Shown here one piece after another: positions 1,024-50,336 of a DNA stretch of 64,000 bases. The stretch is taken from the NCBI GenBank assembly GCA_026770705.1, contig JANJGN010000021.1:89032001-89096000 (forward strand), in the 5' to 3' direction. Numbering within the stretch: position 1 is the stretch's first letter; each line of letters begins with the position of its first letter. The notes below the pieces were generated by a model, which did not search any database, was not told where the DNA came from, and worked only from the letters and a program-made list of their open reading frames with translations. This DNA comes from Isurus oxyrinchus. Lineage: Eukaryota. The translations under genes were made by a program, and so were the position numbers.

Positions 1024-2158
1024 CGGGGGGGGGGGGGGCGGAGAGAGAGAGAAAGAGAGAGAGAAGTGGAGGGGGGTGTGTGGTTGTAGGGACAAACAAG
1101 CAGTGATAGAAGCAGATCATCAAAAGATGTCAACAACAATAGAACAAAAGAACACATAGGTGTTAAAGTTGGTGATATTATCTAAACGAATGTGCTAAAA
1201 CGCCTCAACCCCTTCCTATGGCACCACCCCATGCCCACGCAAAAGTTGCAACACCTGCCCCTTCACTTCCTCTCTCCTCACCGTCCAAGGGCCCAAATAC
1301 TCCTTTCAAGTGAAGCAGCATTTCACTTGCATTTCCCCCAACTTAGTCTACTGCATTCGTTGCTCCCAATGTGGTCTCCTCTACATTGGAGAGACCAAAC
1401 GTAAACTGGGCGACCACTTTGCAGAACACCTGCGGTCTGTCCGCAAGAATGACCCAAACCTCCCTGTCACTTGCCATTTTAACACTCCACCTTGCTCTCT
1501 TGCCCACATGTCTGTCCTTGGCTTGCTGCATTGTTCCAGTGAAGCCCAACGCAAACTGGAGGAACAACACCTCATCTTCCGACTAGGCACTTTACAGCCT
1601 TCCGGACTGAATATTGAATTCAACAACTTTAGGTCTTGAGCTCCCTCCTCCATCCCCACCCCCTTTCTGTTTCCCCTTTCCTTTTTTTTCAATAAATTAT
1701 ATAGATTTTTCTTTTCCCACCTATTTCCATTATTTTTAAATATCTTTGAATCTTTTATGCTCCCCCAACCCCCACTAGAGCTATACCTTGAGTGCCCTAC
1801 CATCCATTCTTAATTAGCACATTCGTTTAGATAATATCACCAACTTTAACACCTATGTGTTCTTTTGTTCTATTGTTGTTGACATATTTTGATGATCTGC
1901 TTCTATCACTGCTTGTTTGTCCCTACAACCACACCCCCCCCCTCCACTTCTCTCTCTCTCCGCACCCCCCCCCCCCCCCACTCCCCCCACCCTCCCCAAC
2001 CACACACACACACACCTTAAACCAGCTTATATTGCACCTCTTTCTTGGACTCAAACTCAAGTTCTGTCGAAGGCTCATGAGGACTCAAAACGTCAACTCT
2101 TTTCTTCTCCGCCGATGCTGCCAGACCTGCTAAGTTTTTCCAGGTAATTCTGTTTTTG
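782..2158. mobile_element. Young Penelope-like insertion with inverted arms (782-~1198 minus, 3' UTR; ~1203-2158 plus, GIY-YIG EN + 3' UTR), nested in an older PLE
   Basis: TSD tttaaaataatgga at 768-781 and 2159-2172; ORF 1310-1639 with NLVYCIRCSQCGLLYIGET. Confidence 0.92.
881..919 (-). ncRNA. Minimal hammerhead ribozyme-like motif (U6 variant)
   Basis: - strand AGTT-CTGTCGA-A-stem II-GAAA-CGTC-AACT. Confidence 0.6.
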
Positions 2159-3991
2159 TTTAAAATAATGGAAATAGGTGGGAAAGGAAAAATCTATATA
2201 AATTATTGGAAAAAAAGGGGGTTTGGAAAGGGGGTGGGGATGGAGGAAAGACTTCATGATCTAAAATTGTTGAACTCAATATTCAGTCCGGAAGTCTGTA
2301 AAGTGCCTAGTCAGAAGATGAGGTGCTGTTCCTCCAGTTTGCATTGAGCTTCACTGGAACAATGCAACAGGACAAGGACGGACATGTGGGCATGAGAGCA
2401 GGGTGGAGTGTTGAAATGGCAAGCGACAGGGAGGTCTGGGTCTTGGTTGCGGACAGACTGAAGGTGTTCCGCAAAGTAGTCACTCAGTCTGCGTTTGGTC
2501 TCTCCAATGTAGAGGAATCCGCATTGGGAGCAGCAAAAGTAATAGACTAAATTGAGAGAAGTGCAAGTGAAATGCTGCTTCACTTGAAAGGAGTGTTTGG
2601 GCCCTTGGACAGTGAGGAGAGAGGAAGTAAAGAGACAGGTTTTGCACCATGCATGGGAAGGTGCATGGGAGGGGGTTGAGGTGTAGTGGTGTTGAAGGAG
2701 TAGACCATGGTGTCTCAGAGGGAATGATCCCCGCGGAATGCCACCAGGTGGGGTGAAGGGAAGATGTGTTTGGTGGTGGCATCATGCTGGAGTTGGCAGA
2801 AATGGCGGAGGATGATCCTTTGAATGTGGAGGCTGGTGCGGTGATAAGTAAGGACAAAGGTGACCATATCTTGGTTCTGGGAGGGAGGGGAAGGTGGGAG
2901 AGCAGTTGCACAGGAGATGGGCTGGACACGGTTGAGGGCCCTGTCAACCACCGTGGGTGGAAAACCTCGCTTAAGGAAGAAGGAACTGTTCTTGAATGAG
3001 GCATGATCAGAACAGATGTGACGGAGGTGAAGGATCTGAGAGAATGGGATGGAGTCCTTACAGGATGCGGCATCTGAGGAGTTGTAGTCGAGGTAGCTGT
3101 GGGAGTTGGTAGGCTTGTAATGAATATTGGTGGACAGTCTATCACCAGAAAGTGAGACAGAGAGGTCAAAGAAGGGAAGGGAACTATCAGAGATGGATCA
3201 TGTGAAAATGATGGAGGAGTGCAAATTGGAAGCAATTTTAATAATTTTCCAGTTCCAGATGAGAGCATGAAGCAGCACCGAAGCAATCATCGATGCACCA
3301 GAGAAAGAGTTGTGCTCGGAGGCTGGAGTAGGACTGGAACAAGGACTGTTCCACATACCCTATAAAAAGTCAGGCATAACTGGGGCCCATGCAGGTACCC
3401 ATATCCACACCTTTGATTTGGAGGAAGTGAGAGGAGTTTAAGGAGTAATTGTTCAGTGAGAGAACAGGTTCAGCCAGATGGAAGACAATAGTGATGCATG
3501 GACATTGTTCGGGCCCCTGTTCGAGGAAGAAGTGGAGAGCCATCAGACCATCCCAGTGGGTGATGGAGGTGTAGAGGGATTGGACGTCCATGGTGAAGAG
3601 GAGGTAGTTGGGGCCAGGAAACTGTAACTGATTGATATGATGTAGGGTGTCAGAGGAATCACGGATGTAGGTGGGAAGAGACTGGGCAAGGGGGGAGACA
3701 ATGGAGTCAAGATAGCAAGAAATGAGTTCCATGGGACAGGAATAGGCTGCCACGATCGGTCCACTGGGACAGTCCTGTTTGTGGATTTTGGGTAGCAGGT
3801 AGAAGCGGGCCGTCCGAGGCTGGGAGACTATGAGGCTGGAAGCTGTGGAAAGAAGATCTCCAGAGGGGATGAGGTCAGTAACAGTCCTGGAAACAATGGC
3901 TTGATGTTCAGTGGTGGGATCATGGTGCAGGGGGAGGTAGGACGAAGCGTCTGCGAGATGACGGTCAGCCTCTGTGAGGTATTTCTTGGAC

Positions 3992-5445
3992 TCCCTCTAT
4001 GGCAAGTACATCATTCCTTAGAAAGGACACCAAAGCTGTACACAATACTCCAGGTGTGCCCTCACCAAGGCTCTATGCAATTGCAGCAAAACCTCTCTAC
4101 TCCTGTGTTCAATCCTCTTGCAATAAAGACCAACATATCATCTCCCTTCTTAATTGCTTGCGGCACCTGCATGTTAGCTTTCTGTGACAAATGAACAAGG
4201 ACACCCAGGTCCCCTCCGACATCAACATTTCCCAACATCGTGGATGTAGATCATCAGGTCCAGGGTGTTTATCACTTTTCAGTCCCATTGATTCCTGAAC
4301 TATTATGTTTTTACTAATACAAATTTCTTTCAGTTCCTCATTCTTGGTCATCCCTTGGTTCTTACTTAAAGGATGCTTTTTGTTCCTTCCTCCATGAAAT
4401 CGGAGACAAGGCAGTTGTTTAGTTTCTCTGCCATTTCCTTATTTTCCACTACAAATTCTCCTGCCTCTGCCTGATGAGCGGAGTCCCACAGGAGTCTGTT
4501 CGGGGGCCTCAAATTTTTTATAATTACATCAATGGCTTAGATGAGGAGAGCGAAGGCATGGTAGCTACATTTGCAGATGAGGCAAATGTAGGAAAGCATG
4601 TTGTGAAGGAGATATAAGGAGTTTGCAGATGGATATTGATAGGTTGAGTAAGCGGGCAAAAATCTGGCAGATGCATCTAAGTGGAAAATGCAAAGTCCTT
4701 CACTTTGGCAGGAAGAATAAAAAAGCTGAGATTGACTTAACTGGAGAACGAGTGCAAGATTTTGAGGTGCAGAGGGATCTAGCTTTTCTAGTGCTTCAGT
4801 CACAAAAGTTTAATATGTAGATACAACATGTAATCAAGAAGGCTAATTGAATGCTATCCCTTATTATGAGAAGAATTGAACATAAAAATATTTTTGCTTC
4901 TGTTATACAGGGCTCTGGTGAGACCATATCTCGAATACTGTGTGCAGTTTGGCCTGCTTAGGTAAGGAAGGATGTATATATATTGCAGGTGGTTTAAAGA
5001 TAGATTCTTGTTAGGCAAAGGAGTGAATGGTTATTGGGGGTAGATGGGGATGTGGAATTTGAAAGACCAACAGATCAGCCATGATGTTTTTGAGAGGCGG
5101 AGCAGGCTCAACGGGCCAAACAGCCTACTTCTGCTCCGATTTCCTATGTTCCTCTGTTTGTATGCAATGGACCCACATGTTTCTTGCTAATCTTTTCTTT
5201 GTTACAAATCTATAGCAGCTTTTAGATCTTATGTTTCTCGCTAGTTTACTCTCACATTTATTTTCTCTTTCTTTGTCATTTCTTAGTCCTCCTCTACTAA
5301 ACTCTAAAATTCTCCAAAACCACGTGCTTAAGTTTGTTTTTGGCAACATTACATGGCTCCTCCATTGGCCCAATACAATCTTTAACTCGTCTTGTTAGCC
5401 ATGGGTGGATTAACTTTCTTGCTGGGATTTTGTGCCTCAAAGAAT
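3992..5445. mobile_element. Mosaic of degenerate CR1-type LINE fragments in both orientations
   Basis: Fragments such as LKSDKHPGPDDLHPR, KCKVLHFGRKNKK and a CR1-like 3' UTR near 5020-5150. Confidence 0.8.
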
Positions 5446-6415: not shown

Positions 6416-7726
6416 GGAAGTTCAGTTTGTTTTAAAACATGTCTTAATTCTTCAGATGCTAGCAATTGCCTGAACGATCATACTTTTTAATGCAGTTTCC
6501 TATCTACAGAGAATTTGCCTCTCATACCTTTGTTGTTTCCTTTGTTTACATTTAAGATGCTCATTTCAGATTGAAATACATCACTTTCAAATTTAATGTA
6601 AAATTCCAGCTTATTATGGTGACTCTTTCATGAAGGTTCCTTTACGAGATTATGAACTATCCCTTTCTCATTCCACAATACCAGATCTAAAATAGCCCTT
6701 TCTCTAATTGGTCCCTCAACATACAATTCCAGAAAATCATCTTGAATATATTCCAGGAAATTGTCCTCCGCAGTATTGTGCTAATTAGGATTACACGGTC
6801 TATGTGTAAATTAAAGCTGTCATTAACGCTGGAGGAGGAGACACAGTGCGAATGTGAGGGAGCAGGATTACTGTCCGCGCACACACAGTTTTCACTCCAC
6901 CCACTTCAGAATTTACATCAATTGTTCTTTGCGCTGCCTCCCAGCGGTTTCACCGGCAAAGACTGAACGCTGAAAAATGCCAGTGTTGTGGCTGTTTAAA
7001 TTAAAAACACGAGTCTAGATTCGTACAACTAATCTGTGCTTCGAGTGTATTTCTACTAAAACATTCAGAGCGAGAAGGAATTGAAAACTTTAAAATATGG
7101 ATGACCCAGGGAAGCAGGAACGTCCACGAAACAGTGCATGACTAAAATTGTCCAGTTAGCCAAAAAGGAAGAAGGAATATTTCATATCATCACAGTTTTT
7201 TGTAATGGTTTTGGTTTCAAAGCTGCTGATGAAATATATCACAGTTACAATGCTGAGATCTACAAAAACGAATAGTTACTGTTAAGATGAGAAAGTTTCA
7301 GCAGTGGAATGTTTAAGAATCAAATAGTCCAGCTCGAGAACCAGATCAGTTTGTACCTGAGGTACTTTTTTGGGAAGGTGGGGAGGTACCAAGTGGGGGT
7401 GGGGTGGGTGGGAGGCGGGAGGTAGGTGTGAGAGTGATTACATTAATCTGCACATCTGTAACAACCACTGTTACATTTATAGTTAGTTTTATCTTGATAA
7501 TTTTCAAAAGCTTTATTAACGTGCACATGCAAACCATGGAGCTCATCTTTCACATATTGTTAACTGGGCGCAAGGCTGAAAACGTCAGAGATACAAGTTT
7601 CCGCTTGTTGATCATTTCTGCTGCTGACTGCTCCCAACCACAGGCTGCTCCATTGAATCGCGTGTACAAAGTGGCCTCCATCTCATTCGGATCCTCTCGT
7701 TCGCTCATTACTTTGATGACGGGAAT

Positions 7727-7802
7727 ATGGGCAGAGAAAGAAGTCGCTTCTTTAAATTCACCAGCGTTTGCCTTTTCACCAGTTACTTTATTTCCACCTG
7801 TG
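7727..7802 (+). CDS. Exon 1 (signal peptide) of single-V-domain Ig receptor: MGRERSRFFKFTSVCLFTSYFISTC
   Basis: ATG at 7727, basic then hydrophobic leader, donor G|GTAAGT; phase 1 joins the V exon in frame. Confidence 0.8.
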
Positions 7803-8559
7803 GTAAGTCCTTTGATTTTTTACAATGAAAGAAATTCTACCTGTAATTTTGCTGGATTCTGTGCGGCTATTTGCTGATGGTGTTTACTCAGAGCTGAGGC
7901 TCCATCACTCACTCATACTGCGAGTGAAGCTAAAATCAGTTCATAAGATCTTCAGCCTCATTCAGCGAGTCTCCTGTGACCTGTCCTCTAGTTAATTTTC
8001 GGCCCTTTAACTGTAGCTGGGATTTATTAATACATAAGCACATCTTCCAGAATTTTTACTATATTGATTATTAATTATTAAGTTGCCAATGTTCTCTTCT
8101 GTATTATAACATGTGTAATAGTGTCAGATTGGATAAGTTGGGATCTGCTAAGCCTTTACTTAATGATTTTATCAATGAATTACTGCAAATTTACGATGCA
8201 GGATTCGGCTACTCGTCCCAACAATTCTAAGCCGATGACTCCTCACGAACCTGCTCCAAGACTTTCCAGTCCATCTCACCCTATCAACATATCCTTTTAC
8301 TCCTTTCTCCCGCATGTCCAGATTCCCTTTGAATTGCAGCTCTCGCCTCAACTGCTCCAAATTGACAGGCGCCTTCTCGCCACGCTGTGCAGCCTGACTG
8401 ACCAGATATACCCCTGTAGCTCAGAGTTTTTTTCCTCACTATTATTCAGCCTGTCCTGCCCACGGCAGCTTTGTGCAAGTGCAAATCACCAAGTCCCACT
8501 CCCCACCTTTAACCTACAATCCAGCAACCCTTGTTTCTCTTCAAGTCATTATCAATTCC

Positions 8560-9640
8560 TAGTTGAACGCCTTGATTGAGTTAGCCTCTACTACATCTCA
8601 GGTAATTCATTCCTGTCATAAACACTCGTATTTCAGAAAGGTTTCCCTTAAGTTCCAGTCCCTTCTTTTATCCACTATCTTAAGTCAGTGTCCGCTAGTT
8701 CTCAATCCTTCTGCCAATGGAAATAGCTTCTCCATATCCACTCTGACCAGACCCCTCAAGATTTTGAATACCTCTAACAAATCTCTTCTCAACTTTCTTT
8801 TGTCCAAGGACAACATTCCCAACTTTTCCAATTTGTCTGCTTAAACTGACGTCTCTCATCCCTGAAGCCATTTTTATAAACCCTTTCCTGCACCCTTCGT
8901 AATTCTTTCACACTCTTCCTAAAGTGTGGTGACCAGAATAGGGCACAATTCTTGTTTGCGGCCAAAGTAGTGCTTTAAAAATGTTTGCGGTGGTTTCTTT
9001 GTTAAGATACACCCCGCTCCTGTTTATAGCTCCCATATGATTTATCTTTTCATTCAATGTGCCTTACCGACTACCAATACACAAATACACATCTCTGCAC
9101 ATCTAGGTGGGGTACCTCTGGTGCTGCACCCCATCTAGAATTATACCATTTCATTAAAATTGCCTCCTGGTTCTTCCTACCAAGGTGAATCTTTTCACAA
9201 TTTCCTGCATTATATTTCCTCAGGTCCGCTCATTTCATCGTCTGTCTCTGTCCTATTGAAGATTCTCACTATGTTCCTCACAGTTCCGAATAATTTCAAG
9301 TTCTGTGTCACCTGCAGGTAATAAAAGTATGTTCTGTGCACTCAAGGCTAAGTCATTAATATATATGGGTGGGAGGGGGCAACATTCTGGGAATCCCATG
9401 ATATAACCTTCCTTCAATCCAAAAATACAACCGTTCACAATGAATCTTTCTTTCACTCGTTCAGCCAATTTCACACCTTTGCTGCTCACGTCCCTTCTAT
9501 TCCATCGGCTCCAGCTTTGCTGACATCTCTGAGCTCTGTCAAAAGGCTTGTTAAACCCACATTGAAAATGTAAATCATCAAACTGTCATTGTTACCCCCC
9601 TCAAAAAAGTCCAAAGAAGTTAGTCAAGCATCTTCCCTTA
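8560..9640 (-). mobile_element. Degenerate CR1 LINE in intron 1
   Basis: IYINDL..., CR1 C-terminal and 3' UTR similarity. Confidence 0.7.
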
Positions 9641-9647
9641 ACAAATG

Positions 9648-9780
9648 AAAGTAAAATACTGCAGATGCTGATAACCTGAGATAAAAACAGGAAATGCTGG
9701 AAAAACTCGGCAGTTTAGGCAGCTTCCGTGGAGAGAGAAACTGAGTGAATGTTTCAGGTCAAGAAACTTTCTTCAGGACG
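9648..9780 (-). mobile_element. Short PLE-derived 3' tail with CTGAAGA hammerhead core
   Basis: Terminal motif tactgcagatgctg...ggaaaaactc; - strand CTGAAGA...GAAAC. Confidence 0.6.
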
Positions 9781-10029
9781 ATTTTATTTCCCTGAACAAA
9801 TCCTTCCTGACTGTCTCTGATTCAATCGGTTTCTTTCTAATTGCCGATTGATCCTGTCCCACAGATTTTCTTTCCAGTCAAGTGTCTTTTTTGCTGATGC
9901 TGCAGGTGTTTATTTTTTATTTGAAACCAATGCGGTGATTTATAACCAGCCTCCTGTGTGAAAACTGTGACTTGGGATTTTAAACAGTTCCTTCCCGAAA
10001 CTGATTCCTTGTTTTTGATGTTGTTGCAG

Positions 10030-10422
10030 CCTCTGGAAGCGGTGTTACTGTGAGGATCCAGCAGAGAGAATTGAACGGGACCGTGACCCAGTCTGTCCTT
10101 CTCCCTGTCTCCTACTCCACACTCACACCCTACTCCGCTTTAAAGATACAGTGGCGTCTATTCCCCAGAGAAACCCCATTTGTGACACTGACCCGATCAA
10201 GCTGCTCCCGACACCCTGACAGACCCGGTTATAACTGTTCAGATCGCACGGAGACCGCTCTTTCCTACCGGCACCGAGTTCACCTCTACCCGGGGAATGG
10301 ATCCTTGTTGCTGCGGGATTTACAGCCCAGTGACAGCGGCGTCTATGTGATATCTGTTTATGCTTTTGGTGAGAATGCAGCCAGGGAAGACATTGTGACT
10401 TTAACCGTCTATAACCAGACAG
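10030..10422 (+). CDS. Exon 2: V-set Ig domain, CD2/CEACAM-N/HEPACAM-like (no B-F disulfide)
   Basis: ttgttgcag acceptor, G|GTAAGA donor, phase 1-1; LNGTVTQSVLLPVSY, IQW, RVHLYPGNGSLLLRDLQPSDSGVY, VTLTV. Confidence 0.93.
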
Positions 10423-10594
10423 GTAAGAGCTCGCACTGTTTTTATCGCATTATACCTCGGTGCTGTTTGTTAATGAATGAACATGTTTCAACTGCACTTT
10501 CCTTGTCCCTGTCGCTTCGAATTGAACCGAATAATGTGAACAATTTGCTAAAGGATTATTAACTTCTCTTTTGAATCTAATGGAGTGGGCGGTG

Positions 10595-10940
10595 GGGGGG
10601 GTTGAGTGGTGTCGTGGTAATGTCACTAGTGATCTGGAACCCGAGGCTAATGCCCAGGGGACACAGGTTCAGATCCCACCATGGCAGCGAGTGGAATTTA
10701 AATTCAGTTAATAAAATCTGAAATAAGTTACGGTGACCACGAAACTATTCTCCATTGTTCTAAAAACACATTTGATTCACTCATGCCCTTTAGGGAAGAG
10801 AATTTGCCAATCTTACCTTGTCCATTCTACATGTGACTCCAGACCCACATAGCAATGCTGTTGCCTCTTAAATGCCCCCACGAGCATTCAAGCGCAATTA
10901 GGGATGGGGAACGAATACTGGCGCCTGCATCCCACGAAAT
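10595..10940 (+). mobile_element. tRNA-derived SINE-like repeat (related copies at ~17750, ~33020, ~37050, ~54190)
   Basis: A-box-like gtggtgtcgtgg, B-box-like ggttcagatcc, shared body and tail among copies. Confidence 0.7.
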
Positions 10941-10991
10941 ATTAATTTAGAAAAAATGACGTTTTTCTAAGTGTCAAAATTCTTGTTGCAG

Positions 10992-11212
10992 ATTCTGGGA
11001 TCCTTCCACCGAGTGTCTCGGAGCGAACGGAGACCCCTAGAGATCTCCCCGAGCACCGAACCGCTCTCCTACTCCGTCTGACCCTCTTTGGCGGTGTCAG
11101 TGTGCTCGGGGCCTGTCTGTACTTGTGTGTGAGTCGGAGATACAGACAGAAGCGACAGCGGCCCAAAAACACACACACAGCCGGAGATGGAGATGAACAA
11201 ATGTTTGTGTAA
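10992..11212 (+). CDS. Exon 3: stalk + transmembrane (with Arg) + short cytoplasmic tail and stop
   Basis: ttgttgcag acceptor, phase 1; DSGILPPSVSERTETPRDLPEHRTALLLRLTLFGGVSVLGACLYLCVSRRYRQKRQRPKNTHTAGDGDEQMFV*. Confidence 0.85.
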
Positions 11213-12013
11213 TTTCATCTATACAACTGATGTCCCCAATAATAACTTCATTACACTGTCCAGGTCCAATTCAAACACTGCTGGAGCTGTCATTAGGGGC
11301 AATGTAGACACATACCCAGCATATGGAATCGATGATGTCCTGTCTCTCCATTTTGCATCATCAATTTTCCATCATTGTTTCAGTTTCTGGAGTATAAAAG
11401 GGAAATGTTGCGGATAATCAGCAGGTCAGTCCGCATGTGTGAAGGGGAAATGACAGGAGATTGGCATTCCCATCGGGAATTTTCCAAACCGCTGGCTGAC
11501 TTTCGACACAATCCCAGAAGTAAAAAAATGGTTTGAGCGATGGTTCGTGCTGTTTCTCCAGGGTTTCTGCCGGTCTTGCCTCGATTTTCCGGCTGAGTGG
11601 GAGATTTCTGCTCCCTCTTCGCCTCTCCCCAGGACATTTTCTGCATTGTAAACACTTTTGTGAAACCCGCTTGCGGAATCCCAGATACAGTCCCAGCGCT
11701 CCAGACCTCAGTGTGAACTGGGAAGATGACTCCTCCCGGCACATCTCCGATAGGAATTCTAGTCCTGTCTTCCGCAAACTCCGTTTGGAAGGTGCCCTTC
11801 CCGCCCTTTGATCTCTTTCCCACAGCCTTTCACTGGGATTCACCGCCGCTGTTCGGCTTTTCTGGTGCATTCTCCCGACCGTCAGTTGCTGCAGTTTGTA
11901 CAATTCACAGCTCATTGACTTAGTGAGTGTGAGTTGACACATTGACCTGCCGTTTTTGGTGATCACTCGCACCTTCTACAGCTGAACTTCAAACTGAGAA
12001 AGAACAAATTCAT

Positions 12014-12217: not shown

Positions 12218-14207
12218 GGGGGGGGTGGAGGGGGGGGGGGCGGAGAGATAGAGAGAGAGAGAGGTGGGGGGGTGTGGTTGTATGGACAAACAAGCAGTGA
12301 TAGAAGCAGATCATCAAAAGATGTCAACAACAATAGTACAATAGAACACATAGGTGTTAAAGTTATAAAAAGAAAGAAAACTGCGGATGCTGGAAATCCA
12401 AAACAAAAACAGAATTACCTGGAAAAACTCAGCAGGTCTGGCAGCATCGGCGGAGAAGAAAAGAGTTGACGTTTCGAGAACTTGGTTCTGTCGAAGGGTA
12501 ATGAGGACTCGAAACGTCAACTCTTTTCTTCTCCGCCGATGCTGCCAGACCTGCTGAGTTTTTCCAGGTAATTCTGTTTTTGTGTTAAAGTTAAAGTTGG
12601 TGATATTATCTAAACGAATGTGCTAATTAAGAATGGATGGTAGGGCACTCAAGGTACAGCTCTAGTGGGGGTGTTTTTTTTATAATGGAAATAGGTGGGA
12701 AAAGAAAAATCTTAATAATTTATTGGAAAAAAAGGAAGGGGGAAACAGAAAGGGGGTGGGGATGGGGGAGGGAGCTCATGACCTAAAGTTGTTGAATTCA
12801 ATATTCAGTCCGGAAGGCTGTAAAGTGCCTAGTCGGAAGATGAGGTGTTGTTCCTCCAGTTTGCGTTGGGCTTCACTGGAACAATGCAGCAAGCCAAGGA
12901 CAGACATGTGAGCAAGAGAGCAGGGTGGAGTGTTAAAATGGCAAGCGACAGGGAGGTTTGGGTCTGACATGTCCTCCTTCTTCCTTAACCGAGGTTTTCC
13001 ACCCACGGTCGTTAACAGGGCCCTCAACCATGTCTGGCCCATCTCCCGCGCATCCACCCTCACGCCTTCTCCTCCCTCCCAGAAACATGATAGGGTCCCC
13101 CTTGTCCTCACTTATCACCCCACCAGCCTCCGCATTCAAAGGATCATCCTCCACCATTTCCGCCAACTCCAGCATGATGCCACCACCAAACACATCTTCC
13201 CTTCACCCCCCTTATTGGCATTCCGTAGGGATCGCTCCCTCCGGGACACCCTGGTCCACTCCTCCATCACCCCCTACTCCTCAACCCCCTCCTAAGGCAC
13301 CACCCCATGCCCACGCAAAAGATGTAACACCTGCCCCTTCACTTCCTCTCTCCTCACCGTCCAAGGACCCAAACACTCCTTTCAAGTGAAGCAGCATTTC
13401 ACTTGCATTTCCCCCAACTTAGTCTACTGCATTCGTTGCTCCCAATGTGGTCTCCTCTACATTGGAGAGACCAAACGTAATCTGGGCGACCGCTTTGCAG
13501 AACACCTGCGGTCTGTTCGCAAGAATGACCCAAACCTCCCTGTCGCTTGCCATTTTAACACTCCACCCTGCTCTCTTGCCCACATGTCTGTCCTTGGCTT
13601 GCTGCATTGTTCCAGTGAAGCCCAACGCAAACTGGAGGAACAACACCTCATCTTCCGACTAGGCACCTTACAGCCTTCCAGACTGAATATTGAATTCAAC
13701 AACTTTAGGTCGTGAGCTCCCTCCTCCATCCCCACCCCCTTTCTGTTTCCCCCTTCCTTTTTTTTCCAATAAATTATAAAGATTTTCCTTTTCCCACCTA
13801 TTTCCATTATAAAAAAAAACACCCCCACTAGAGCTATACCTTGAGTGCCCTACCATCCATTCTTAATTAGCACATTCGTTTAGATAATATCAGCAACTTT
13901 AACTTTAACACCTATGTGTTCTATTGTACTATTGTCTTTGACATCTTTTGATGATCTGCTTCTATCACTGCTTGTTTGTCCACACAACCACTCCTCTCTC
14001 TCTATCTCTCCACCCCCCACACACACACCTTAAACCAGCTTATATTTCAACTCTTTCTTGGACTCGAACTCAAGTTCTGTCGAAGGGTCATGAGGACTCG
14101 AAAGGTCAACTCTTTTCTTCTCCGCCGATGCTGCCAGACCTGCTGAGTTTTTCCAGGTAATTCTGTTTTTGTTTTGGATTTCCAGCATCTGCAGTTTTTT
14201 TGTTTTT
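12014..14207. mobile_element. Young Penelope-like insertion with inverted arms (12014-~12964 minus; ~12963-14207 plus, thumb/linker/EN + 3' UTR)
   Basis: TSD aagaacaaattcat at 12000-12013 and 14208-14221; GIY-YIG ORF 13386-13715; premature TAA at 13293-13295. Confidence 0.92.
12366..12581. mobile_element. Mini palindromic PLE derivative (two inverted 3' termini) nested in a PLE 3' UTR
   Basis: TSD gtgttaaagtta at 12354-12365 and 12582-12593; complete hammerhead motif on + at ~12485-12522. Confidence 0.88.
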
Positions 14208-19324: not shown

Positions 19325-21635
19325 AGATAAAAACAAAAAACTGTGGATGCTGGAAATCCAAAACAAAAACAGAATTACCTGGAAAAACTCAGCAGGTCTG
19401 GCAGCATCGGCAGAAAAGAAAAGAGTTGACGTTTCAAGTCCTCATGACCCTTCAACAGAATTGAGTGAATATGAGGAGAGGGGTGAAATATAAGCTGGTT
19501 TAAGGTGGTGGGGGGGGGGGGGGGGGGGGAGAGAAGTGGGGGTGGTAGTGTGGTTGTAGGGACAAGCAATCAGTGATAGGAGCAGATATCAAAAGATGTC
19601 ACAGACAAAAGAACAAAAGAACACAGAGGTGTTGAAGGTGGTGATATTATCTAAATGAATGTGCTAATTAAGAATGGATGGTAGGGCACTCAAGGTACAG
19701 CTCTAGTGGGGGTGAGGTGGAAAGACTAGCAGGGCATAAAAGATTTAAAAATAACGGAAATAGGTGGGAAAAGAAAAATCTATATAAATTATTGGAAAAA
19801 ACAAAAGGAAGGGGGAAGAAACAGAAAGGGGGTGGGGATGGAGGAGGGAGGTCAAGATCTAAAGTTGTTGAATTCAATATTCAGTCTGGAAGGCTGTAAA
19901 GTGCCTAGTCGGAAGATGAGGTGTTGTTCCTCCAGTTTGTGTTGGGCTTCACTGGAACAATGCAGCAAGCCAAGGAGAGGCATGTGGGCAAGAGAGCAGG
20001 GTGGAGTGTTAAAATGGCAAGCGACAGGGAGGTTGGGTCATTCTTGCGGACAGACTGCAGGTGTTCTGCAATGCGGTCGTCCAGTTTACGTTTGGTCTCT
20101 CCAATGTAGTGGAGACCGCATTGGGAGCCATGAATGCAGTAGACTAAGTTGGGGGAAATGCAAGTGAACTGCTGCTTCACTTGAAAGAAGTGTTTGGGCC
20201 CTTGGACGGTGAGGAGAGAGGAAGTGAAGGGGCAGGTGTTGCATCTTTTGCGTGGGCATGGGGAGGTGCCATAAGTGGGGGTTGAGGAGTAGGGAGTGAT
20301 GGAGGAGTGGACCAGGGTGTCCCGGAGAGAACAATCCCTATGGAATGCCGCTAGGGGGTTGAAGGAAAGATGTGTTTGGTGGTGGCATCATGCTGGAGTT
20401 GGCGGAAATGGCAGAGGATGATCCTTTGAATGCAGAGGCTGGTGGGGTGATAAGTGAAGACAAGGGGGACCCTATCATGTTTTTGGGAGGGAGAAGAAGG
20501 TGTGAGGGCGGATGCGTGGGAGATGGGCCGGACATAGTTAAGGGCCCTGTCAACGACCGTGGGTGGAAAACCTCGGTTAAGGAAGAAGGAGGACATGTCA
20601 GAGGAACTGTTTTTAAAGGTAACATCATCAGAACAGATGCACCGGAGGTGAAGGAACTGAGAGAATGGGATGGAGTCCTTACAGGAAGCGCGGTGTGAGG
20701 AGCTGTAGTCGAGGTAGCTGTGGGAGTCAGTAGGTTTGTAATGGATATTGGTTGACAGTCTTTCACCAGAGATTGAGACAGAGAGGTCAAGGAAGAGAAG
20801 TGTCAGAGATGGACCACGTGAAAATGATGGAGGGGTGGAGATTGGAAGCAAAACTAATAAATTTTTCCAAGTCCCGACGAGAGCATGAAGCAGCACCAAA
20901 GTAATCATCGATGTACCGGAGAAAGAGTTGTGGAAGGGGGCCGGAGTAGGACTGCAACAAGGAATGTTCCACATACCCCATAAAGAGACAGGCATAGTTC
21001 GGGCCCATGCGGGTACCCATAGCCACACCTTTTATTTGGAGGAAGTGAGAGGAGTTTAAGGAGAAATTGTTCAGTGTGAGAACAAGTTCAGCCAGATGGA
21101 GGAGTGTAGTGGTGGATGGGGATTTTTCGGGCCTCTGTTCGAGGAAGAAGCTAAGGGCCCTCAGACCATCCTGGTGGGGGATGGAGGTGTAGAGGGATTG
21201 GACGTCCATGGTGAAGAGGAAGCGGTTGGGGCCAGGGAACTGGAAATTGTTGATGTAACGTAAGGTGTCAGAGGAATCACGAATGTAGGTGGGAAGGAAT
21301 TGGACAAGGGGAGAGTGAAGGGAGCCAAGATAACGAGAAATGAGTTCCGTGGGGCAGGAGCAGGCTGACACGATCAGTCTACAGGGACATTTCTGTTTGT
21401 GGATTTTGGGTAGGAGGTAGAAGCGGGCTGTCCGAGGTTGGACGACTATCAGGTTGGAAGCTGTGGGAGGAAGATCTCCAGAGGAGATGAGGTCACTGAT
21501 AGTCCTGGAATCAATGGCTTGATGTTCAGTGGTGGATTCATGGTCCAGGGAGAGGTAGGAGGAAGTGTCTGCGAGTTGATGCTCAGCCTCCGCGAGGTAG
21601 AGGTCAGTGCGCCAGACAACAACAGCACCACACTT
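19325..21635 (-). mobile_element. Penelope-like retroelement, 5'-truncated with frameshifts
   Basis: FYLLPKIHK, FTMDVQSLYTSIP, GVAMG, RYIDD and GIY-YIG fragments; hammerhead-like motif at ~19423-19460. Confidence 0.93.
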
Positions 21636-21849
21636 GATTGTGTTATGCTGCAGTTCAAAGGATTCCACAGTGTCTGTTAGGCAAATCATGAATGAGGGGA
21701 TGTAGCTTGACCAATGAGAAGTGAAATCAGGATATATATTTACATACAAAGGTGAGTAGAAATCTGGAATGCCTCCCACCCCCACCCATCCCATCACCAA
21801 CCTCCAGCCCCCACAGGGGGAAAGGATGTGGATGGTGGGGAACAATTAG

Positions 21850-36562: not shown

Positions 36563-36631
36563 ACATTCTGAGCCAAATAGCCTGTTTCTATGTAATTCTA
36601 GATTATGAAATTAGATGCTACCCTGACTTAC

Positions 36632-36901
36632 CCTTGATGGACAGCTGATAGCTGTTGCTCTCTCGACTGACTGGGTTTTCGATAGTGCAGTTATAATAAC
36701 CAGAGTCTGATTCCTCTACATTCCTAATGGTTAAAGTACTGTTGTCTGCGGAGAGAAAATAACGCTCGTCATCTGGGAGTGTGAGCCCTCCTCTGATCCA
36801 CCAAATGGAACTGGCTGTCCCGCTCTGCACTGTACAGCTCAGAATAATCATGTTCTTCTCAAGGCTGTCATTTCTGGTGATTTGGGGTGTGGAGAGGGGA
36901 T
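36632..36901 (-). CDS. C2-type Ig domain exon (SLAM/CEACAM/HEPACAM-like)
   Basis: tctttctccag acceptor, G|GTAAGT donor, 270 nt, phase 1-1; IILSCTV, WW, LSADNSTLTIRNVEESDSGYYNCTIENPVS. Confidence 0.93.
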
Positions 36902-37210
36902 CTGGAGAAAGACACAAATAGAGGGTATGTCACTTAATTAACAAATTCATCAATTTGCAGTTATACAGCATCTTTCACAAACTCAGGAGGTGCCAAAGTG
37001 TGTTAAACCCAATGAAATACACTTGAGTCGAGGGAACTGTGGCACAGGCATAACATTACTACAGCAGTAACACAAAGGCCCAGACTGATGAGCTCAAACA
37101 TCACCATGGCAGCACCTGTCTCAACAATGGTGACCATGAAACTACCAGATTGTCATTAAAAACCATTCTGATTCACTGATGTCCTTTAGGGGACAAAATC
37201 TGCCTTCTTA

Positions 37211-37491: not shown

Positions 37492-40400
37492 GATAAAAGC
37501 AAAAAACTGTGGATGCTGGAAATCCAAAACAAAAACAAAAATACCTGGAAAAACTCAGCAGGTCTGGCAGCATCTGCGGAGAGGAACACAGTTAACGTTT
37601 GGAGACCGAATGACCCTTAAACAAAACTAAGTAAAAATAGAAGAGAGGTGAAATATAAGCTGGTTTAGTGGGGGGGGAGGGGGGGGGGGGGGGGGGGGGG
37701 TGGGGGCGGGGGGGCTGGGGGTGTAGTGGGGGGTGGGACAAGCAGTGCTGGATAGAGGGCCAGTGATAGGTGGAGATAGCCAAAAGATGTCACAGACAAA
37801 AGGACAAAGTTGTTGAAGGTGGTGATATTATCTAAGGAATGTGCTAATTAAGGGTAGAAAGCAGGACAAGCAAGGTACAGATAGTCCTAGTGGGGGTGGG
37901 GTGAAGGAATCAAAAAAGGCTAAAAGGTAGAGATAAAACAATGGATGGAAATACATTTAAAAATAATGGAAGTAGGTAGGAAAAGAAAAATCTATAAAAA
38001 TTATTGGAAAAAAATGGGGGGGGAAATCTGAAAGGGAGTGGGGATGGAGGAGAGAGTTCATGATCTAAAATTGTTGAACTCAATATTCAGTCCGGAAAGC
38101 TGTAAAGTGCCTAGTCGGAAGATGAGGTGCTGTTCCTCCAGTTTGCATTGAGCTTCACTGGAATAATGAAGCAGGTCAAGGACGGACATGTGGGCATGAG
38201 AGCAGGGTGGATGTTGAAATGGCAAGCGACAGGGAGGTCTGGGTAATGCTTGCGGACAGACTGAAGGTGTTCTGCACAGCGGTCACCCAGTGTGTGTTTG
38301 GTCTCTCCAATGTAGAGGAAACTGCATTGGGAGCAATGAATGCAGTAGACTAAATTGAGGGAAGTGCCTGTGAAATGCTGCTTCACTTGAAAGGAGTGTT
38401 TGGGCCCTTGGACGGTGAGGAGAGGGGAAGTCAAGGGGCAGGTGTTGCACCTTCTGCAGTTGCATGGGAAGGTGCCGTGGAAGGGAATTGAGGTTAGGGG
38501 GTGATGGAGGAGTGGACCAGGGTGTCCTGGAGGGAATGATCCCTGCGGAATGCTGCCGGGGGGGTTGAAGGGAAGATGTGTTTGGTGGTGGCATCATGCT
38601 GCAGTTGGCGGAAATAGCGGAGGATGATCCTTTGAATGTGGAGGCTGGTGGGGTGATGAGTGAGGACAAGGGGGACCCTATCATGTTTCTGGGAGGGAGG
38701 AGAAGGTTTGAGGCCAGATGCGCGGGTGATGAGTCGGACACAGTTGAGTGCCCTGTCGACCAGTGTGTGTGGAAAACCTCGGTTAAGGAAGAAGGAGGAC
38801 ATGTCAGAGGAACTGTGTTTGAAAGTGGCATCATCAGAACAGATGCAGCGGAGTCGAAGGAACTGAGAGAATGGGATGGAGTCCTTACAGGAAGCGGGGT
38901 ATGAGGAGCTGTAGTCGAGGTAGCTGTGGGAGTTGGTAGGCTTATAATGGATATTGGTGGACAGTCTATCAGCGGAAATTGAGACAGAGAGGTCAAGGAA
39001 GGGAAGGGAAGTGTCAGAGATGGACCACGTGAAAATGATGGAGGGGTGGAAATTGGAAGCAAAATTAATAAATATTTCCAGGTCCAGACGAGAGCATGAA
39101 GCAGCACCAAATTAATCATCGATGTACCGGAGAAAGAGTTGTGGAAGGGGGCTGGAGTAGGAGTGGAACAAGGAATGTTCCACATACCCCATAAAGAGAC
39201 AGGCATAGCTGGGGCCCATATGGGTACCCATAGCTACACCTTTTATTTGAAGGAAGTGAGAGGAGTTTAAGGAGAAATTGTTCAGTGTGAGAACAAGTTC
39301 AGCCAGACGGAGGAGAGTAGTGGTGGATGGGGATTGTTCAGGCCTCTGTTCGAGGAAGAAGCTAAGGGCCATCAGACCATCCCGGTGGGGGATGGAGGTG
39401 TAGAGGGATTGGACCTCCATGGTGAAGAGGAAGCGGTTGGGGCCAGGGAACTGGAAATTGTTTATATGATGTAGGGTGTCAGAGGAATCACGGATGTGGT
39501 TGGGAAGTGACTGGACAAGGGGAGAGTGAATGGAGTCAAGATAGCAAGAAATGAGTTCCGTGGGGCAGGAACAGGCTGACATGATCGGTCTGCCGGGGGG
39601 TTCTTGTTTGTGGATTTTGGGTAGGAGGTAGAAGCGGGCTGTCTGAGGTTAGGAGAGTATCAGGTTGGAAACTGTGGAAGGAAGATCTCCAGAGGAGATG
39701 AGGTTAGTAACAGTCCTGGAAACAATGGCTTGATGTTCAGTGGTGGGATCATGGTCCAGGGTGAGGTAGGAGGAAAAGTCTGCGGGTTGACGCTCTATCC
39801 GCAGGATAGAGGTCAATGCACCAGACAACAGCACCACCCTTGTCAGTGGGTTTAATGACAATGTCAGGGTTGGACCTGAGAGAACGGAGTGCAGCAAGTT
39901 CAGAGAGAGACACTAAGATAAAAGCAAAAAACTGCGGATGCTGGAAATCCAAAACAAAAACAAAAATACCTGGAAAAAGTCAGCAGGTCTGGCAGCATCT
40001 GTGGAGGAGCACAGTTAACATTTTGAGTCCGAGTGACCCTTCAACAGAACTAAGTAAAAATAGAATGGAGGTAAAATATAAGCAGGTTTACGGGTGGGTG
40101 GGACAAGTACAGCTGGATAGAAGGCCAGTGATAGGCGGAGATAACCAAAAGATGGCACAGACAACAGCAGAAAGAGGTGTTGAAGGTGGTGATATTATCT
40201 AAGGAATGTGCTAATTAAGGGTAGAAAGCAGGACAATCAAGGTACAGATAGTCCTAGTGGGGGTGGGGTGAAGGAATCTAAAAAGGCTAAAAGGTAGAGA
40301 TAAAACAATGGATGAAAATACATTTAAAAATAATTGAAGTAGGCGGGAAAAGAAAAATCTATATAAATTATTGGGAAAAAAAGGTGGGGAAATCAGAAAG

Positions 40401-40790
40401 GGGGTAGAGATGGAGGAGAGAGTTCATGATCTACAATTGTTGACTCAATATTCAGTCCAGAAGGCTGTAAAGTACCTAATCGGAAGATGAGGTGCTGTTC
40501 CTCCAGTTTGCGTTGAGCTTCACTGAAACAATGCAGCAAGTCAAGGACGGACATGTTGACATGAAAGCAGGGTGGAGTGTTGAAATGGCAAGCGACAGGG
40601 GGGTCTGGGTAATGCTTGCAGACAGACCGAAGGTGTTCTGCAAAGCGGTCACCCAGTCTGCGTTTGGTCTCTCCAATGTAGAGGAAACCACATTGGGAGC
40701 AACGAATGCAGTAGACTAAATTGAGGGAAGTGCAAGTGAAATGCTGCTTCACTTGACAGGAGTGTTTGGGCCCTTGAATGGTGAGGAGAG
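37492..40790 (-). mobile_element. Partial-tandem Penelope-like element (EN+3'UTR unit 39916-40790 followed by RT-EN+3'UTR unit 37492-39915)
   Basis: One TSD, ggcacacctca, at 37481-37491 and 40791-40801; RYIDD and GIY-YIG fragments. Confidence 0.92.
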
Positions 40791-41659
40791 GGCACACCTC
40801 ATCTCATCAACCCTGCAAAACCCTCTTTACTAACAGCTGAGGGCTGGTGTCAAATTGGAAGAGCAGACTACTGACGCAGTCATACCATACAGCTAATTGT
40901 CCCAGACTCCTTCATCACTGTCTCTGGGTCTGTTCCATCCCAGCAGAAGAACAGAGCATGAGAGAGAGGGCAAGGCAATGGAATATAGTTGGGATAGAGC
41001 CCTCAATGTTGACCTGATGCTGTTAGACTCAGCAGTTAACTTAAGGGCGAGGATTACCAGCCATCACCCTCCCCTCAGCTGATGAATCAGTGCTCTGCCA
41101 TTTGGCCACCACTTGGAAGAAGCACCAGGGGTAGAAAAGGCTCAGAAGGTACTCCAGTGGAGAATGTCCACGTCCATCATCAGCATTAATACTCTTTCTC
41201 CCTTTCTGAAAAAAAAAGGTGAACAATTCTAAGGGAGTCAGGAACCAAGACAAGTTAGAGGTGTGGATCACAAAATTTACACCACCCACATTGAGGTCAC
41301 TAGGCACTACAGGTATTTGTGAACCAATAGCAAGCCAGGGTGACGGACAGGAGGGTCAGCAGGGTAGTACGCACACTGACAGCTTGAGTACCTGTCCTCT
41401 ATCCATTAGTCAGAAGGCTTTGATTGACCCTGGGTAGGCTACCAGCCCCTAGAAATAAAGGCCCATAACTTAATCTCCAGGGCGTCATACCCAGGAGTTT
41501 TGGGAGGGGTGGTGTGGTCACAGTGGGGAACCGCTCTCCACAACCATTCCCCTTGCCCGCAAAATGTCCCTACATCAGGATTGCAGAGCAGTTGCCTAGG
41601 AAGTTCAAGCTTCCGTTCTGCAATTACCCTGATCTAGGAAACATCCCCCCCATAGGGGG

Positions 41660-48935: not shown

Positions 48936-50336
48936 CATCTTTATTTTTGTTAGGCAAGGGAATCAAAGGTTATCAGGGGAGAGATGGGAACATGGAATTT
49001 GAAACAAACGGATCAGCCATGATCGTATTGAATGGCCGAGCAGGCACGATGGGCCGAATGGCCGACATCTACTCCTATTCCATATGTTCATATGTCCTGG
49101 AGTGGGACTTGAACCTGGAGCCTGACTGAGCCACAAGACTTCCATCCTAAGGAAGCAAAATGTCCTGTATTAACGTTAGTGCTTTGTTTCGCTCTCTATT
49201 GCTGTTTGTACCAATAACTGCATTTCAGTACTTGATGGGACAGAAAAATGGGTTTGATTACAGCTTTCATGTGTAAACAAGAGGCCAAAAATTGGGGCCT
49301 TCAGTGGTATTAAGATTAGCCATTGCTGGCCAAAGAGGATAGCTGTAAGAGCAGTGATACAACAGTTGAGAACCCTTTAGCAGGCGTACTGCTTTTGGTG
49401 CGTTTGCCTCTTACCAGCAGCGGGTGGGAAACTGCACCTGGTTATAACAACAGTAACAATGGCTGGAGATGCACCAAGTACATTTCATGTTCTGGGAAGC
49501 AGATGCACTGTGAAAGTGAGCTGATACCACAAAGGATTAAATTTCACACTATCCCTGCGAAAAGCTGCTGAAGCTGGCAGTCAATTGAAAACTTCAAAAG
49601 GAGAATAATAGTTTGATGTTAGGCAGGGGTATGATGTTTTACAGAACCGAGACAGGTAAATGGTTCAAACACAGGCCAACCGCGATGTAATTCAATGGAG
49701 GAATTGGCTGGAGGGGCTGAATGACCTTGTGTTCCTATGCTCTTTTCTTCCGAGTTTCAAATAGTTTTACAAGCAAATGTATGTCATTCAGAACTCTTTA
49801 TGGGCCAGCTGGTTTGAGACTCATGGTCCAGGTGTGTGATCTGATGCACTGTGTCAGGATTGTCCAGCCCGTGGACCAGATGCGGCCCGTGAAGCCCCTC
49901 TATTGTGGCCTTCCGGAGCCACTGTTCAAAATGATGGTCAAATGGGTAAGTGGAGTGGAAGATTATGCAAAGAGCTGTTCCTCCAATCACAGGCCGTTCC
50001 TCTCCCACAGCAGTAAACGTGGGAGAGAAACGGTGTCTGATTGGAGGAGCATCAAACACCAGCGATAGTGAATGTGCTGGGAGAAGGGAGGTTTTCAGGG
50101 CTCGGGGTAGACACCATGTGACAGAATGGACAATTTTATTGTGGGATGGGGGTGAGGAAAGAGAATCCTCATCCATAAAATTGAAGGGACAGGAAAGAAG
50201 GAATCACTCAATTGCTGTTAAACATTGGTTTCACCCATAATCACTAGAGTCAGACCACCATGGCAACTAATACATCCAAACATTAAATATACATTTTGTT
50301 CAAACAGTGTGCATTGGAATATCTGTAGGTACTTAC

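What the first reader, a model, noticed from the sequence alone, without database searches (positions are those of the whole stretch)
7727..11212. Complete 3-exon single-V Ig receptor with a transmembrane arginine (activating-receptor design) that the ORF track does not show
Seen: three exons with canonical splice sites and matching phase 1 give a 229-aa type I membrane protein. The TM reads ALLLRLTLFGGVSVLGACLYLCV (Arg codon 11075-11077), followed by a basic RRYRQKRQR segment and a short tail ending QMFV with no ITIM/ITSM/ITAM. Known: an Arg near the N-terminus of the TM is how FcalphaRI, GPVI, NKp46 and activating LILRs pair with FcRgamma-type ITAM adaptors, and GPVI has a similar basic juxtamembrane segment. 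Inference: a CD2/CEACAM/HEPACAM-like ectodomain joined to an adaptor-coupled TM may define a little-described activating immune receptor family in cartilaginous fish.
Basis: partly seen in the sequence, partly recalled or inferred. Interest (0 to 1): 0.8.

Follow-up and report, generated by a model that had tools for sequence, protein, structure and literature searches.

The report
Shark activating partner of paired Ig receptor
This is an intact three-exon shark gene for a small one-domain cell-surface receptor with a conserved arginine in its membrane anchor; it appears to be the "on" partner of near-identical "off" receptors, in an unnamed receptor family that sharks share with birds and turtles.

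Summary
Exons 7727-7802, 10030-10422 and 10992-11212 (+) have GT/AG borders in phase 1-1 and give 229 aa: leader, one V-set Ig domain without the usual B/F cysteines, stalk, the segment ALLLRLTLFGGVSVLGACLYLCV, a basic stretch and a motif-free tail.

The same V domain occurs in other sharks with two kinds of C-terminus:
- a neutral anchor with an ITIM plus an ITSM-like tail;
- a homologous Arg-bearing anchor with a short tail (catshark, two bamboo sharks).

The Arg is invariant in 4 of 4. V domains group by species, and within a species the two forms are 92-98% identical. The Arg exon is shared across three shark orders. This is the pattern of a paired activating/inhibitory receptor with V-exon homogenisation.

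Among the listed hits the family is found in sharks, rays, birds and turtles only, is unnamed, and I found no paper on it.

Not shown:
- Adaptor coupling was not tested.
- The 10422/10992 junction has no transcript support; no contig covers exon 3. cDNA-like contigs do stop at the borders of exons 1 and 2.

This scan had already noted an Arg-anchor Siglec-like receptor elsewhere in this genome, and single-V genes just upstream of this window.

The parts
7727..7802 (+). Exon 1: start codon and signal peptide (25 codons plus 1 base), donor GTG|gtaagt
   Evidence: Translation, sequence. It is 48% identical over 23 aa to the N-terminus of catshark P0005, with the start Met at the same place. A contig of run X3 fits 7736-7801 with no difference and then runs on for 30 letters that are unlike the intron (record 17).
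7803..10029 (+). Intron 1 (2227 bases), holding dispersed repeats
   Evidence: gt...ag borders. Repeat-like depth peaks lie at 8235-8361, 8743-8996 and 9632-9758 in all four runs.
10030..10422 (+). Exon 2: one V-set Ig domain in phase 1-1, without the B/F-strand cysteines, with four N-x-S/T sequons
   Evidence: Pfam PF07686 at E 8e-9. AlphaFold2 model with mean pLDDT 90.8, all beta. Foldseek gives V-set folds. Homologues reach E 1.5e-72. Contig pieces begin at 10029 (X3 record 20, X4 record 29) and end at 10422 (X2 record 12, X3 record 21).
10203..10238 (+). Family-specific cysteine pair (TGC 10203-10205 and TGT 10236-10238), roughly mid-domain
   Evidence: C69 is invariant and C58 is at least 90% conserved in 43 sequences from sharks, birds and turtles. 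That the two form a disulfide is inferred.
10423..10991 (+). Intron 2 (569 bases) with a repeated element
   Evidence: gt...ag borders. Very high contig depth at 10648-11028.
10992..11212 (+). Exon 3: stalk, membrane anchor, basic stretch, short tail and stop
   Evidence: Translation. tblastn of P0005 gives E 1.75e-8 (60% over 47 aa); P0009 and P0012 give E 0.008 and 0.003 over 60 aa, starting at the split Asp codon. No contig covers 11029-11282.
11063..11131 (+). Hydrophobic membrane segment ALLLRLTLFGGVSVLGACLYLCV
   Evidence: It is the only hydrophobic stretch of exon 3 (Kyte-Doolittle 19-residue peak 1.93). The pattern LLLR..G.V.V.GA.LY is shared with three other sharks.
11075..11077 (+). 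Arg codon (CGT) at residue 5 of the hydrophobic segment
   Evidence: Sequence. The Arg is aligned and invariant in 4 of 4 Arg-anchor forms. The same search pattern also picked up an Arg near the outer edge of the anchor in two ray proteins, P0109 and P0122.
11135..11161 (+). Basic stretch RRYRQKRQR just inside the membrane
   Evidence: SRR.R.K is shared with the bamboo-shark forms.
11129..11134 (+). Donor-like GTGAGT inside exon 3, directly after the codon for the last Cys of LYLC
   Evidence: Sequence. The catshark model P0005 departs from the other three forms exactly after LYLC. Whether this site is used here is unknown.

Best explanation
The gene encodes the activating member of a paired (activating/inhibitory) family of single-V-domain immune receptors.

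Its V domain is kept nearly identical to that of ITIM-bearing paralogues, probably by gene conversion, so both forms would see the same or similar ligands. Its own C-terminus has no signalling motif. It has a membrane segment with a conserved arginine close to the outer leaflet, followed by a short basic tail.

The most likely mechanism is that the arginine pairs with the membrane aspartate of a dimeric ITAM adaptor of the zeta/FcRgamma or DAP12 type. That pairing would be needed for stable surface expression and would pass the signal to Syk/ZAP-70-type kinases.

Shown: the gene structure, the domain, the two tail types, conservation of the Arg, and the species-wise grouping of V domains.

Inferred: gene conversion, adaptor pairing, signalling, cell type and ligand.
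For: - Gene model and V-set domain.
- Two tail types on one V domain. Forms with a neutral anchor have 74-82 residue tails with L-x-Y-S-L-L (an ITIM) and T-I-Y-A-F-A (ITSM-like), for example P0001, P0002, P0004, P0006 and P0016. Arg-anchor forms with 16-residue tails are P0009 and P0012. P0005 has the same anchor.
- The Arg-anchor exon is homologous between this window and Scyliorhinus, Hemiscyllium and Chiloscyllium (E 1.75e-8, 0.008 and 0.003). The window holds no ITIM-tail exon.
- The Arg is invariant in 4 of 4.
- In the V-domain tree each Arg-anchor form sits with the inhibitory form of its own species or order, with support 100/97, 97/81 and 98/96. Identity within a species is 92-98%, against 64-72% between Arg-anchor forms of different shark orders.
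- Birds show the same layout. Adjacent genes have V domains 87-97% identical, one with ITSM plus ITIM and one with a short tail.
- The Asp codon split across the exon 2/3 junction is conserved in both tail types.
- A zeta-family adaptor gene, CD3Z, is expressed in sharks (PMC10768021).
- In macaques, activating KIR with an Arg in the membrane segment pair with FcRgamma rather than DAP12 (PMC8102735, abstract).
Against: - No transcript contig covers exon 3, so the 10422/10992 junction and expression of this copy are unverified.
- The contigs that respect the borders of exons 1 and 2 may come from paralogues.
- Hydropathy cannot tell whether the Arg is buried or sits at the membrane edge.
- A turtle member with a long ITSM-bearing tail also has LLLR before its anchor (P0116), so that motif alone does not prove an activating function.
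- One study found no FcRgamma homologue in shark genomes (PMC4016189).
- No adaptor was searched for in this genome.
- Only four Arg-anchor forms are known, and a word search with the catshark anchor found only the query itself.
Confidence: 0.65

Rival explanations
1. It is a short-tailed receptor that does not signal: a decoy or ligand sink for the inhibitory partner's ligand, or an adhesion molecule. The Arg snorkels at the membrane edge, and it and the basic stretch serve only as topology signals.
For: Hydropathy gives an equally good 19-residue window that excludes the Arg. Turtle P0116 has LLLR before a full-length neutral anchor and an ITSM-bearing tail. Bird short-tailed partners have an Arg only at the outer edge of their anchor. 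FcRgamma was reported absent from sharks (PMC4016189).
Against: The Arg follows three to four hydrophobic residues in all four sharks and is invariant while the stalk beside it varies freely. The inhibitory forms have no conserved charge at this place. The contrast between an Arg-bearing anchor with a short tail and a neutral anchor with an ITIM tail is the classic adaptor-coupled design (established knowledge).
Confidence: 0.2
2. It is a silent or decaying duplicate. The three exons are still open, but this copy is not transcribed, or exon 3 is not used.
For: Depth is zero over 11029-11282 in all four runs laid. The first AATAAA lies 2.5 kb downstream of the stop. The gene is absent from the protein collections searched.
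Against: All three reading frames, both splice-site pairs and the phases are intact. The family's invariant residues are all present. The anchor motif is kept. The runs were small, of unknown tissue and held only as contigs, which show presence but not absence.
Confidence: 0.08
3. The donor-like GTGAGT at 11129-11134 is used, so the anchor is spliced to further exons and the protein has a different, possibly signalling, tail.
For: The site matches the donor consensus. The catshark model P0005 leaves the shared sequence exactly at this point.
Against: Nothing in the window resembles the P0005 tail or any ITIM tail. The bamboo-shark models read through to a stop, with a conserved SRR.R.K stretch.
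Confidence: 0.07

Closest known systems
CEACAM1 / CEACAM3-type paired receptors (CEA family)
   Same: The N-terminal V-type domain lacks the canonical disulfide. The inhibitory partner has ITIM plus ITSM. Gene conversion is described as keeping receptor and decoy receptor alike (PMC13278318, PMC5112662). CEACAM6, CEACAM1 and CEACAM8 are among the best solved relatives by profile (E 1e-7 to 3e-5). A CEACAM-like C2 exon lies in the same window on the other strand.
   Different: The match covers only the C-terminal half of the V domain. Activating CEACAMs carry ITAM-type motifs in their own tails, not a charged anchor. This family has one V domain and no C2 domain. Ducks and fowl have this family, yet are reported to lack intact CEACAM genes (PMC13278318). 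It is therefore not CEACAM proper.
Activating receptors of the leukocyte receptor complex that pair with FcRgamma (FcalphaRI, GPVI, NKp46, activating LILR; chicken CHIR-A)
   Same: An arginine lies a few residues into the membrane segment, the tail is short and motif-free, and there are inhibitory paralogues with ITIMs (established knowledge; PMC4016189 for FcalphaRI and CHIR-AB1).
   Different: Those receptors have C2-type Ig domains and are unrelated in sequence. No match to them appeared in any search here.
Single-V paired receptors of mammals and teleosts (PILRalpha/beta, CD300, TREM, NITR)
   Same: One V domain, with inhibitory ITIM forms beside forms that have a charged anchor and use DAP12-type adaptors (established knowledge).
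   Different: Those V domains keep the canonical disulfide. Their charged residue is usually a mid-membrane lysine. No sequence-level relation was found here.
JAML
   Same: It is the best solved relative by profile (E 5.3e-8) and appears among the Foldseek matches.
   Different: JAML has two V domains with canonical cysteines. The match covers only about 50 residues.
HEPACAM / HEPACAM2 (names given by automatic annotation to some family members)
   Same: It has a V-set N-terminal domain.
   Different: No HEPACAM structure or family came up in the Pfam, PDB or fold searches. HEPACAM has V plus C2 domains. The name looks like a nearest-hit label, not an orthology call.

Membership tests
Immunoglobulin V-set domain (Pfam PF07686) | Score above Pfam's curated cut-off over the whole domain | tested here: met
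   36.1 bits against a cut-off of 26, E 8e-9, profile positions 2-108 of 109. The model is all beta with pLDDT 90.8.
Immunoglobulin V-set domain (Pfam PF07686) | Canonical B-strand and F-strand cysteine pair | tested here: not met
   The B strand reads LLPVSY and the F strand GVYVISV. A different conserved pair (C58, C69) is present instead. Several V-set subfamilies, such as CD2 and the CEACAM N domains, also lack the canonical pair, so this does not exclude the fold.
Paired activating/inhibitory immune receptors | Near-identical ectodomains on two kinds of membrane and tail region | tested here: met
   92-98% V identity between the two forms within each of three shark species. The window V is 93% and 89% identical to the inhibitory forms of two related sharks. 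The paralogue in this genome was not read.
Paired activating/inhibitory immune receptors | Inhibitory partner with an ITIM | tested here: met
   L-[VT]-Y-S-L-L in the tails of P0001, P0002, P0004, P0006, P0007 and others.
Paired activating/inhibitory immune receptors | Activating partner with a basic residue in the membrane segment and a short tail without motifs | tested here: met
   Arg at residue 5 of 23, a 26-residue tail and no tyrosine motif. Membrane depth is inferred.
Paired activating/inhibitory immune receptors | Physical and functional coupling to an ITAM adaptor | not testable with these tools
   This needs co-expression and co-precipitation. Only CD3Z expression in sharks is on record (PMC10768021).
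Paired activating/inhibitory immune receptors | Partners clustered in the genome | tested here: inconclusive
The window holds no ITIM-tail exon. Bird partners carry consecutive locus tags.
CEACAM family | N domain recognisably related to CEACAM N domains over its whole length | tested here: inconclusive
   Profile E 1e-7 to 3e-5, but only over about 45 residues. Single-sequence E values are 0.08-0.24.
CEACAM family | Taxonomic range consistent with CEACAM genes | tested here: not met
   Family members occur in Anas, Gallus, Phasianus, Cygnus and Lagopus. Galloanserae are reported to have no complete CEACAM gene (PMC13278318).
CEACAM family | Location in the region syntenic to the CEACAM locus | not tested
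   Only a CEACAM-like C2 exon in the same window is known. No flanking marker genes were seen.

The most novel reading that the evidence does not exclude
This is an unnamed paired-receptor family that dates back to the common ancestor of jawed vertebrates. It survives in sharks, rays, turtles and birds, and no member from mammals, amphibians or teleosts was among the listed hits. Its activating arm in sharks uses a membrane arginine. If so, adaptor-coupled activating receptors, and the arms-race style homogenisation of their binding domains, were already in place in cartilaginous fish, a lineage in which FcRgamma has been reported missing. The partner would then be a zeta-like, DAP12-like or still unknown adaptor.
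Probability: 0.35. Interest if true: 0.65.

Novelty: new member of a known kind. Interest (0 to 1): 0.5.

Why it matters
Little is described about innate activating and inhibitory receptor pairs in cartilaginous fish, and I found no paper on this family.

A confirmed Arg-anchor receptor with ITIM-bearing twins would give a concrete handle on three questions:
- Which ITAM adaptors do sharks use? One published screen found no FcRgamma.
- How old is the paired-receptor design?
- Does V-exon homogenisation, which the CEACAM literature links to pathogen pressure, also act here?

It also shows that lamniform shark annotations miss the activating members of this cluster.

Tried and rejected
I therefore could not read orthologous or paralogous loci, their DNA or their synteny.
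- The Atlas would not take the window's own sequence. With homologue P0009 it gave only generic V-set clusters and a VSTM5 lead. Pfam does not support VSTM5: exon 3 hits no family.
- A word search with the catshark stalk and anchor (P0005, residues 155-212) found only the query.
- BLASTP of exon 3 against a turtle anchor (P0116) and a bird short-tail anchor (P0032) found nothing (E 29 and 6.7). Homology of the shark and bird short-tailed arms is not shown.
- A leader exon specific to the activating type was considered and dropped. Inhibitory forms match exon 1 about as well.
- Fold search gave only generic V-set folds: PD-L1, VSIG4, VCBP3, JAML, CAR.
- Literature searches for the family, for chicken LOC771657 and for shark DAP12/FcRgamma found nothing specific.
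- 16 of the 18 listed base differences in the V exon change the amino acid. My own binomial estimate against a 75% neutral expectation is p about 0.13, so this is a hint only.
- The large representative search was not run. The operators called it costly, the word searches had already placed the protein, and unannotated genes would not be in it.
Each exon was searched apart, and exon 2 was sent inside its own open frame 10005-10559.
Full report
**What is there**

The three proposed exons are real open pieces with canonical borders. Exon 1 is 7727-7802, with donor GTG|gtaagt. Exon 2 is 10030-10422, after a pyrimidine-rich ...ttgttgcag and before gtaaga. Exon 3 is 10992-11212, after ...cttgttgcag.

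Both introns are in phase 1, the usual phase for Ig-domain exons. The split codons give Ala and Asp, and the total is 229 aa.

The Arg codon CGT is at 11075-11077. The tail SRRYRQKRQRPKNTHTAGDGDEQMFV has a single tyrosine that fits no ITIM, ITSM or ITAM pattern.

**The domain**

Exon 2 is a V-set Ig domain: Pfam E 8e-9, above the curated cut-off, over 107 of 109 profile positions. An AlphaFold2 model built on 43 family sequences is confident (mean pLDDT 90.8) and all beta. Foldseek finds only general V-set folds such as PD-L1, VSIG4, VCBP3, JAML and CAR.

The domain lacks the canonical B- and F-strand cysteines. It has another cysteine pair, C58 and C69 (codons 10203-10205 and 10236-10238), which is invariant or nearly so across the family.

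A profile of the family finds JAML (5e-8) and the CEACAM6, CEACAM1 and CEACAM8 N domains (1e-7 to 3e-5) as the nearest solved relatives. The match covers only the last 45-50 residues of the domain.

**Relatives and the two tail types**

I searched exon 2 inside its own open frame so that full-length proteins fell in the length range. It finds proteins of Cetorhinus (93% identity), Carcharodon (89%), Scyliorhinus (72-76%), Hemiscyllium, Chiloscyllium, Heterodontus, Heptranchias, Mustelus and rays (58-68%). It also finds bird and turtle proteins at about 40%. Nearly all are labelled 'uncharacterized'. The window's own protein is not in the collection, so this copy appears not to be annotated.

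Reading the sequences shows one V domain on two kinds of C-terminus:
- Most proteins have a neutral anchor and a 74-82 residue tail with L-x-Y-S-L-L (an ITIM) and T-I-Y-A-F-A (ITSM-like).
- Three have an Arg-bearing anchor: catshark P0005 (...HRAALLLRGSIVGGVTVLGACLYLC...), and bamboo sharks P0009 and P0012 (...ILLLRVSTLGFVAVFGASLYWYVSRRCREKCQQEL), which have 16-residue tails.

The window's exon 3 is homologous to these. tblastn gives E 1.75e-8 for P0005, and 0.008 and 0.003 for P0009 and P0012, starting at the split Asp codon. Nothing in the 64 kb resembles an ITIM tail.

In the alignment of the four Arg-anchor forms the Arg is invariant, and the pattern LLLR..G.V.V.GA.LY is shared, while the stalk beside it varies.

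**Paired-receptor signature**

In a maximum-likelihood tree of V domains, every Arg-anchor form groups with the inhibitory form of its own species or order:

| Arg-anchor form | Groups with | Support |
|---|---|---|
| Chiloscyllium punctatum | own inhibitory form | 100/97 |
| Scyliorhinus canicula | own inhibitory form | 97/81 |
| this window | the two lamniform inhibitory forms | 98/96 |

Identity within a species is 92-98%. Arg-anchor forms of different shark orders share only 64-72%.

The Arg-anchor exon itself is shared across Lamniformes, Carcharhiniformes and Orectolobiformes. The simplest reading is an old activating gene whose V exon is repeatedly homogenised with that of its inhibitory neighbour. 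That is the behaviour described for CEACAM receptor and decoy pairs (PMC13278318, PMC5112662). This is inference; I could not run a conversion test without the paralogous DNA.

Birds show the same layout. Genes with consecutive locus tags (for example in Alca, Balearica and Theristicus) have V domains 87-97% identical. One carries T-I-Y-A-R-I (ITSM) plus V-V-Y-T-S-I (ITIM), and the other a short tail with a different anchor. That bird anchor shows no detectable similarity to the shark one.

**Family range and name**

A profile word search returned 211 proteins. The best 120 (all E below 1e-61) are from sharks, rays, birds and turtles only, with no curated name. 'HEPACAM-like' appears as an automatic label. 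The 91 weaker hits were not listed, so absence from other classes is not proven.

The family is present in ducks, geese and fowl. A recent survey reports that these birds have no complete CEACAM gene (PMC13278318). The family is therefore CEACAM-like in style but not CEACAM proper.

Full-text searches found no paper on it.

**Transcript evidence**

Only small public runs kept as contigs hold parts of the stretch, and their RNA status is a guess. When laid on 7600-11400, contig pieces stop exactly at exon borders and then run on with unlike letters:

| Run and record | Fits | Note |
|---|---|---|
| X3 record 17 | 7736-7801 | no differences, then 30 further letters |
| X3 record 20 | starts at 10029 | |
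| X4 record 29 | starts at 10029 | |
| X2 record 12 | ends at 10422 | |
| X3 record 21 | ends at 10422 | followed by 323 unlike letters |

This behaviour fits cDNA and supports the borders of exons 1 and 2. At least some of these contigs come from paralogues or relatives. X2 carries the Lys38-to-Asn change of the Carcharodon inhibitory protein. Record 21 continues into something other than exon 3.

No run covers 11029-11282. The 10422/10992 junction, and expression of this copy, therefore rest on homology with annotated models in other sharks, on the conserved split Asp codon and on intact frames. They do not rest on RNA.

**Mechanism**

Shown: the architecture, the pairing with ITIM forms and the conserved Arg.

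Inferred: the Arg, a few residues into the membrane from outside, pairs with the membrane aspartate of a dimeric ITAM adaptor. This is the established mode for Arg-bearing receptors that use FcRgamma, and macaque Arg-bearing KIR use FcRgamma rather than DAP12 (PMC8102735).

Which adaptor a shark would use is open. One survey found no FcRgamma homologue in sharks (PMC4016189), while CD3Z is expressed in catshark and nurse shark (PMC10768021).

Caveats:
- Hydropathy cannot fix the depth of the Arg.
- A turtle member with an inhibitory-type tail also has LLLR before its anchor.
- A donor-like GTGAGT sits at 11129-11134, exactly where the catshark model leaves the shared sequence.

- The large representative search was not used.

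**Verdict**

The design is well known and the family is new to the literature. The same scan already noted an Arg-anchor Siglec-like receptor elsewhere in this genome, and single-V genes just upstream of this window. Interest is moderate.

Noticed in passing
window 36624-36908 (-), 50329-50628 (-), about 50885-50938 (-): A second IgSF gene lies on the other strand. It has a disulfide-less V exon (best solved hits CD48/CD2, E 1e-3). More than 13 kb downstream on that strand is a C2 exon whose best solved hits are CEA (1.7e-30) and CEACAM1 (1.6e-21). A weak leader-like match precedes the V exon. The window may therefore lie in a CEACAM/CD2-like gene cluster.
   Followed up: partly
window 1199-1636 (+), 2314-3996 (-), 12937-13712 (+), 19908-21845 (-), 38114-39648 (-), 40396-40803 (-), 57095-58357 (+): There are many copies of one retroelement, with reverse-transcriptase-like and endonuclease-like open frames. 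Earlier notes call them Penelope-like elements. They coincide with the GC-skew peaks seen about every 18 kb.
   Followed up: no
window 10149-10422: Contigs from one sample (X1 record 4, X3 record 21) are identical to the window's V exon from 10149 to 10346, then differ at seven places between 10347 and 10422. Five of the six listed differences change the amino acid. This mosaic would fit a conversion tract between paralogues.
   Followed up: partly
window 11129-11134: A donor-consensus GTGAGT lies inside exon 3, right after the anchor's last Cys codon. This is exactly where the catshark model P0005 diverges into an unconserved 80-residue tail.
   Followed up: partly
window 8235-8361, 8743-8996, 9632-9758, 10648-11028: Dispersed repeats in both introns reach contig depths in the hundreds to thousands in all four runs. 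Many contigs join them in different ways.
   Followed up: no
proteins P0027/P0032, P0029/P0040, P0026/P0112, P0041/P0043: Bird members of the family come as pairs with V domains 87-97% identical; three of the four pairs carry adjacent gene identifiers. One partner has ITSM plus ITIM. The other has a short tail and an anchor of the type R-I-P-C-Y-V-F-G-G-C-Y-C-F-I-L-L..Q..H.
   Followed up: partly
proteins P0109, P0122 (rays): Two-V-domain relatives in Hemitrygon and Mobula have an anchor beginning I-G-I-[HN]-L-R-Y-I-G-L-V-V and a 37-residue tail. These may be another Arg-anchor lineage of the wider family.
   Followed up: no
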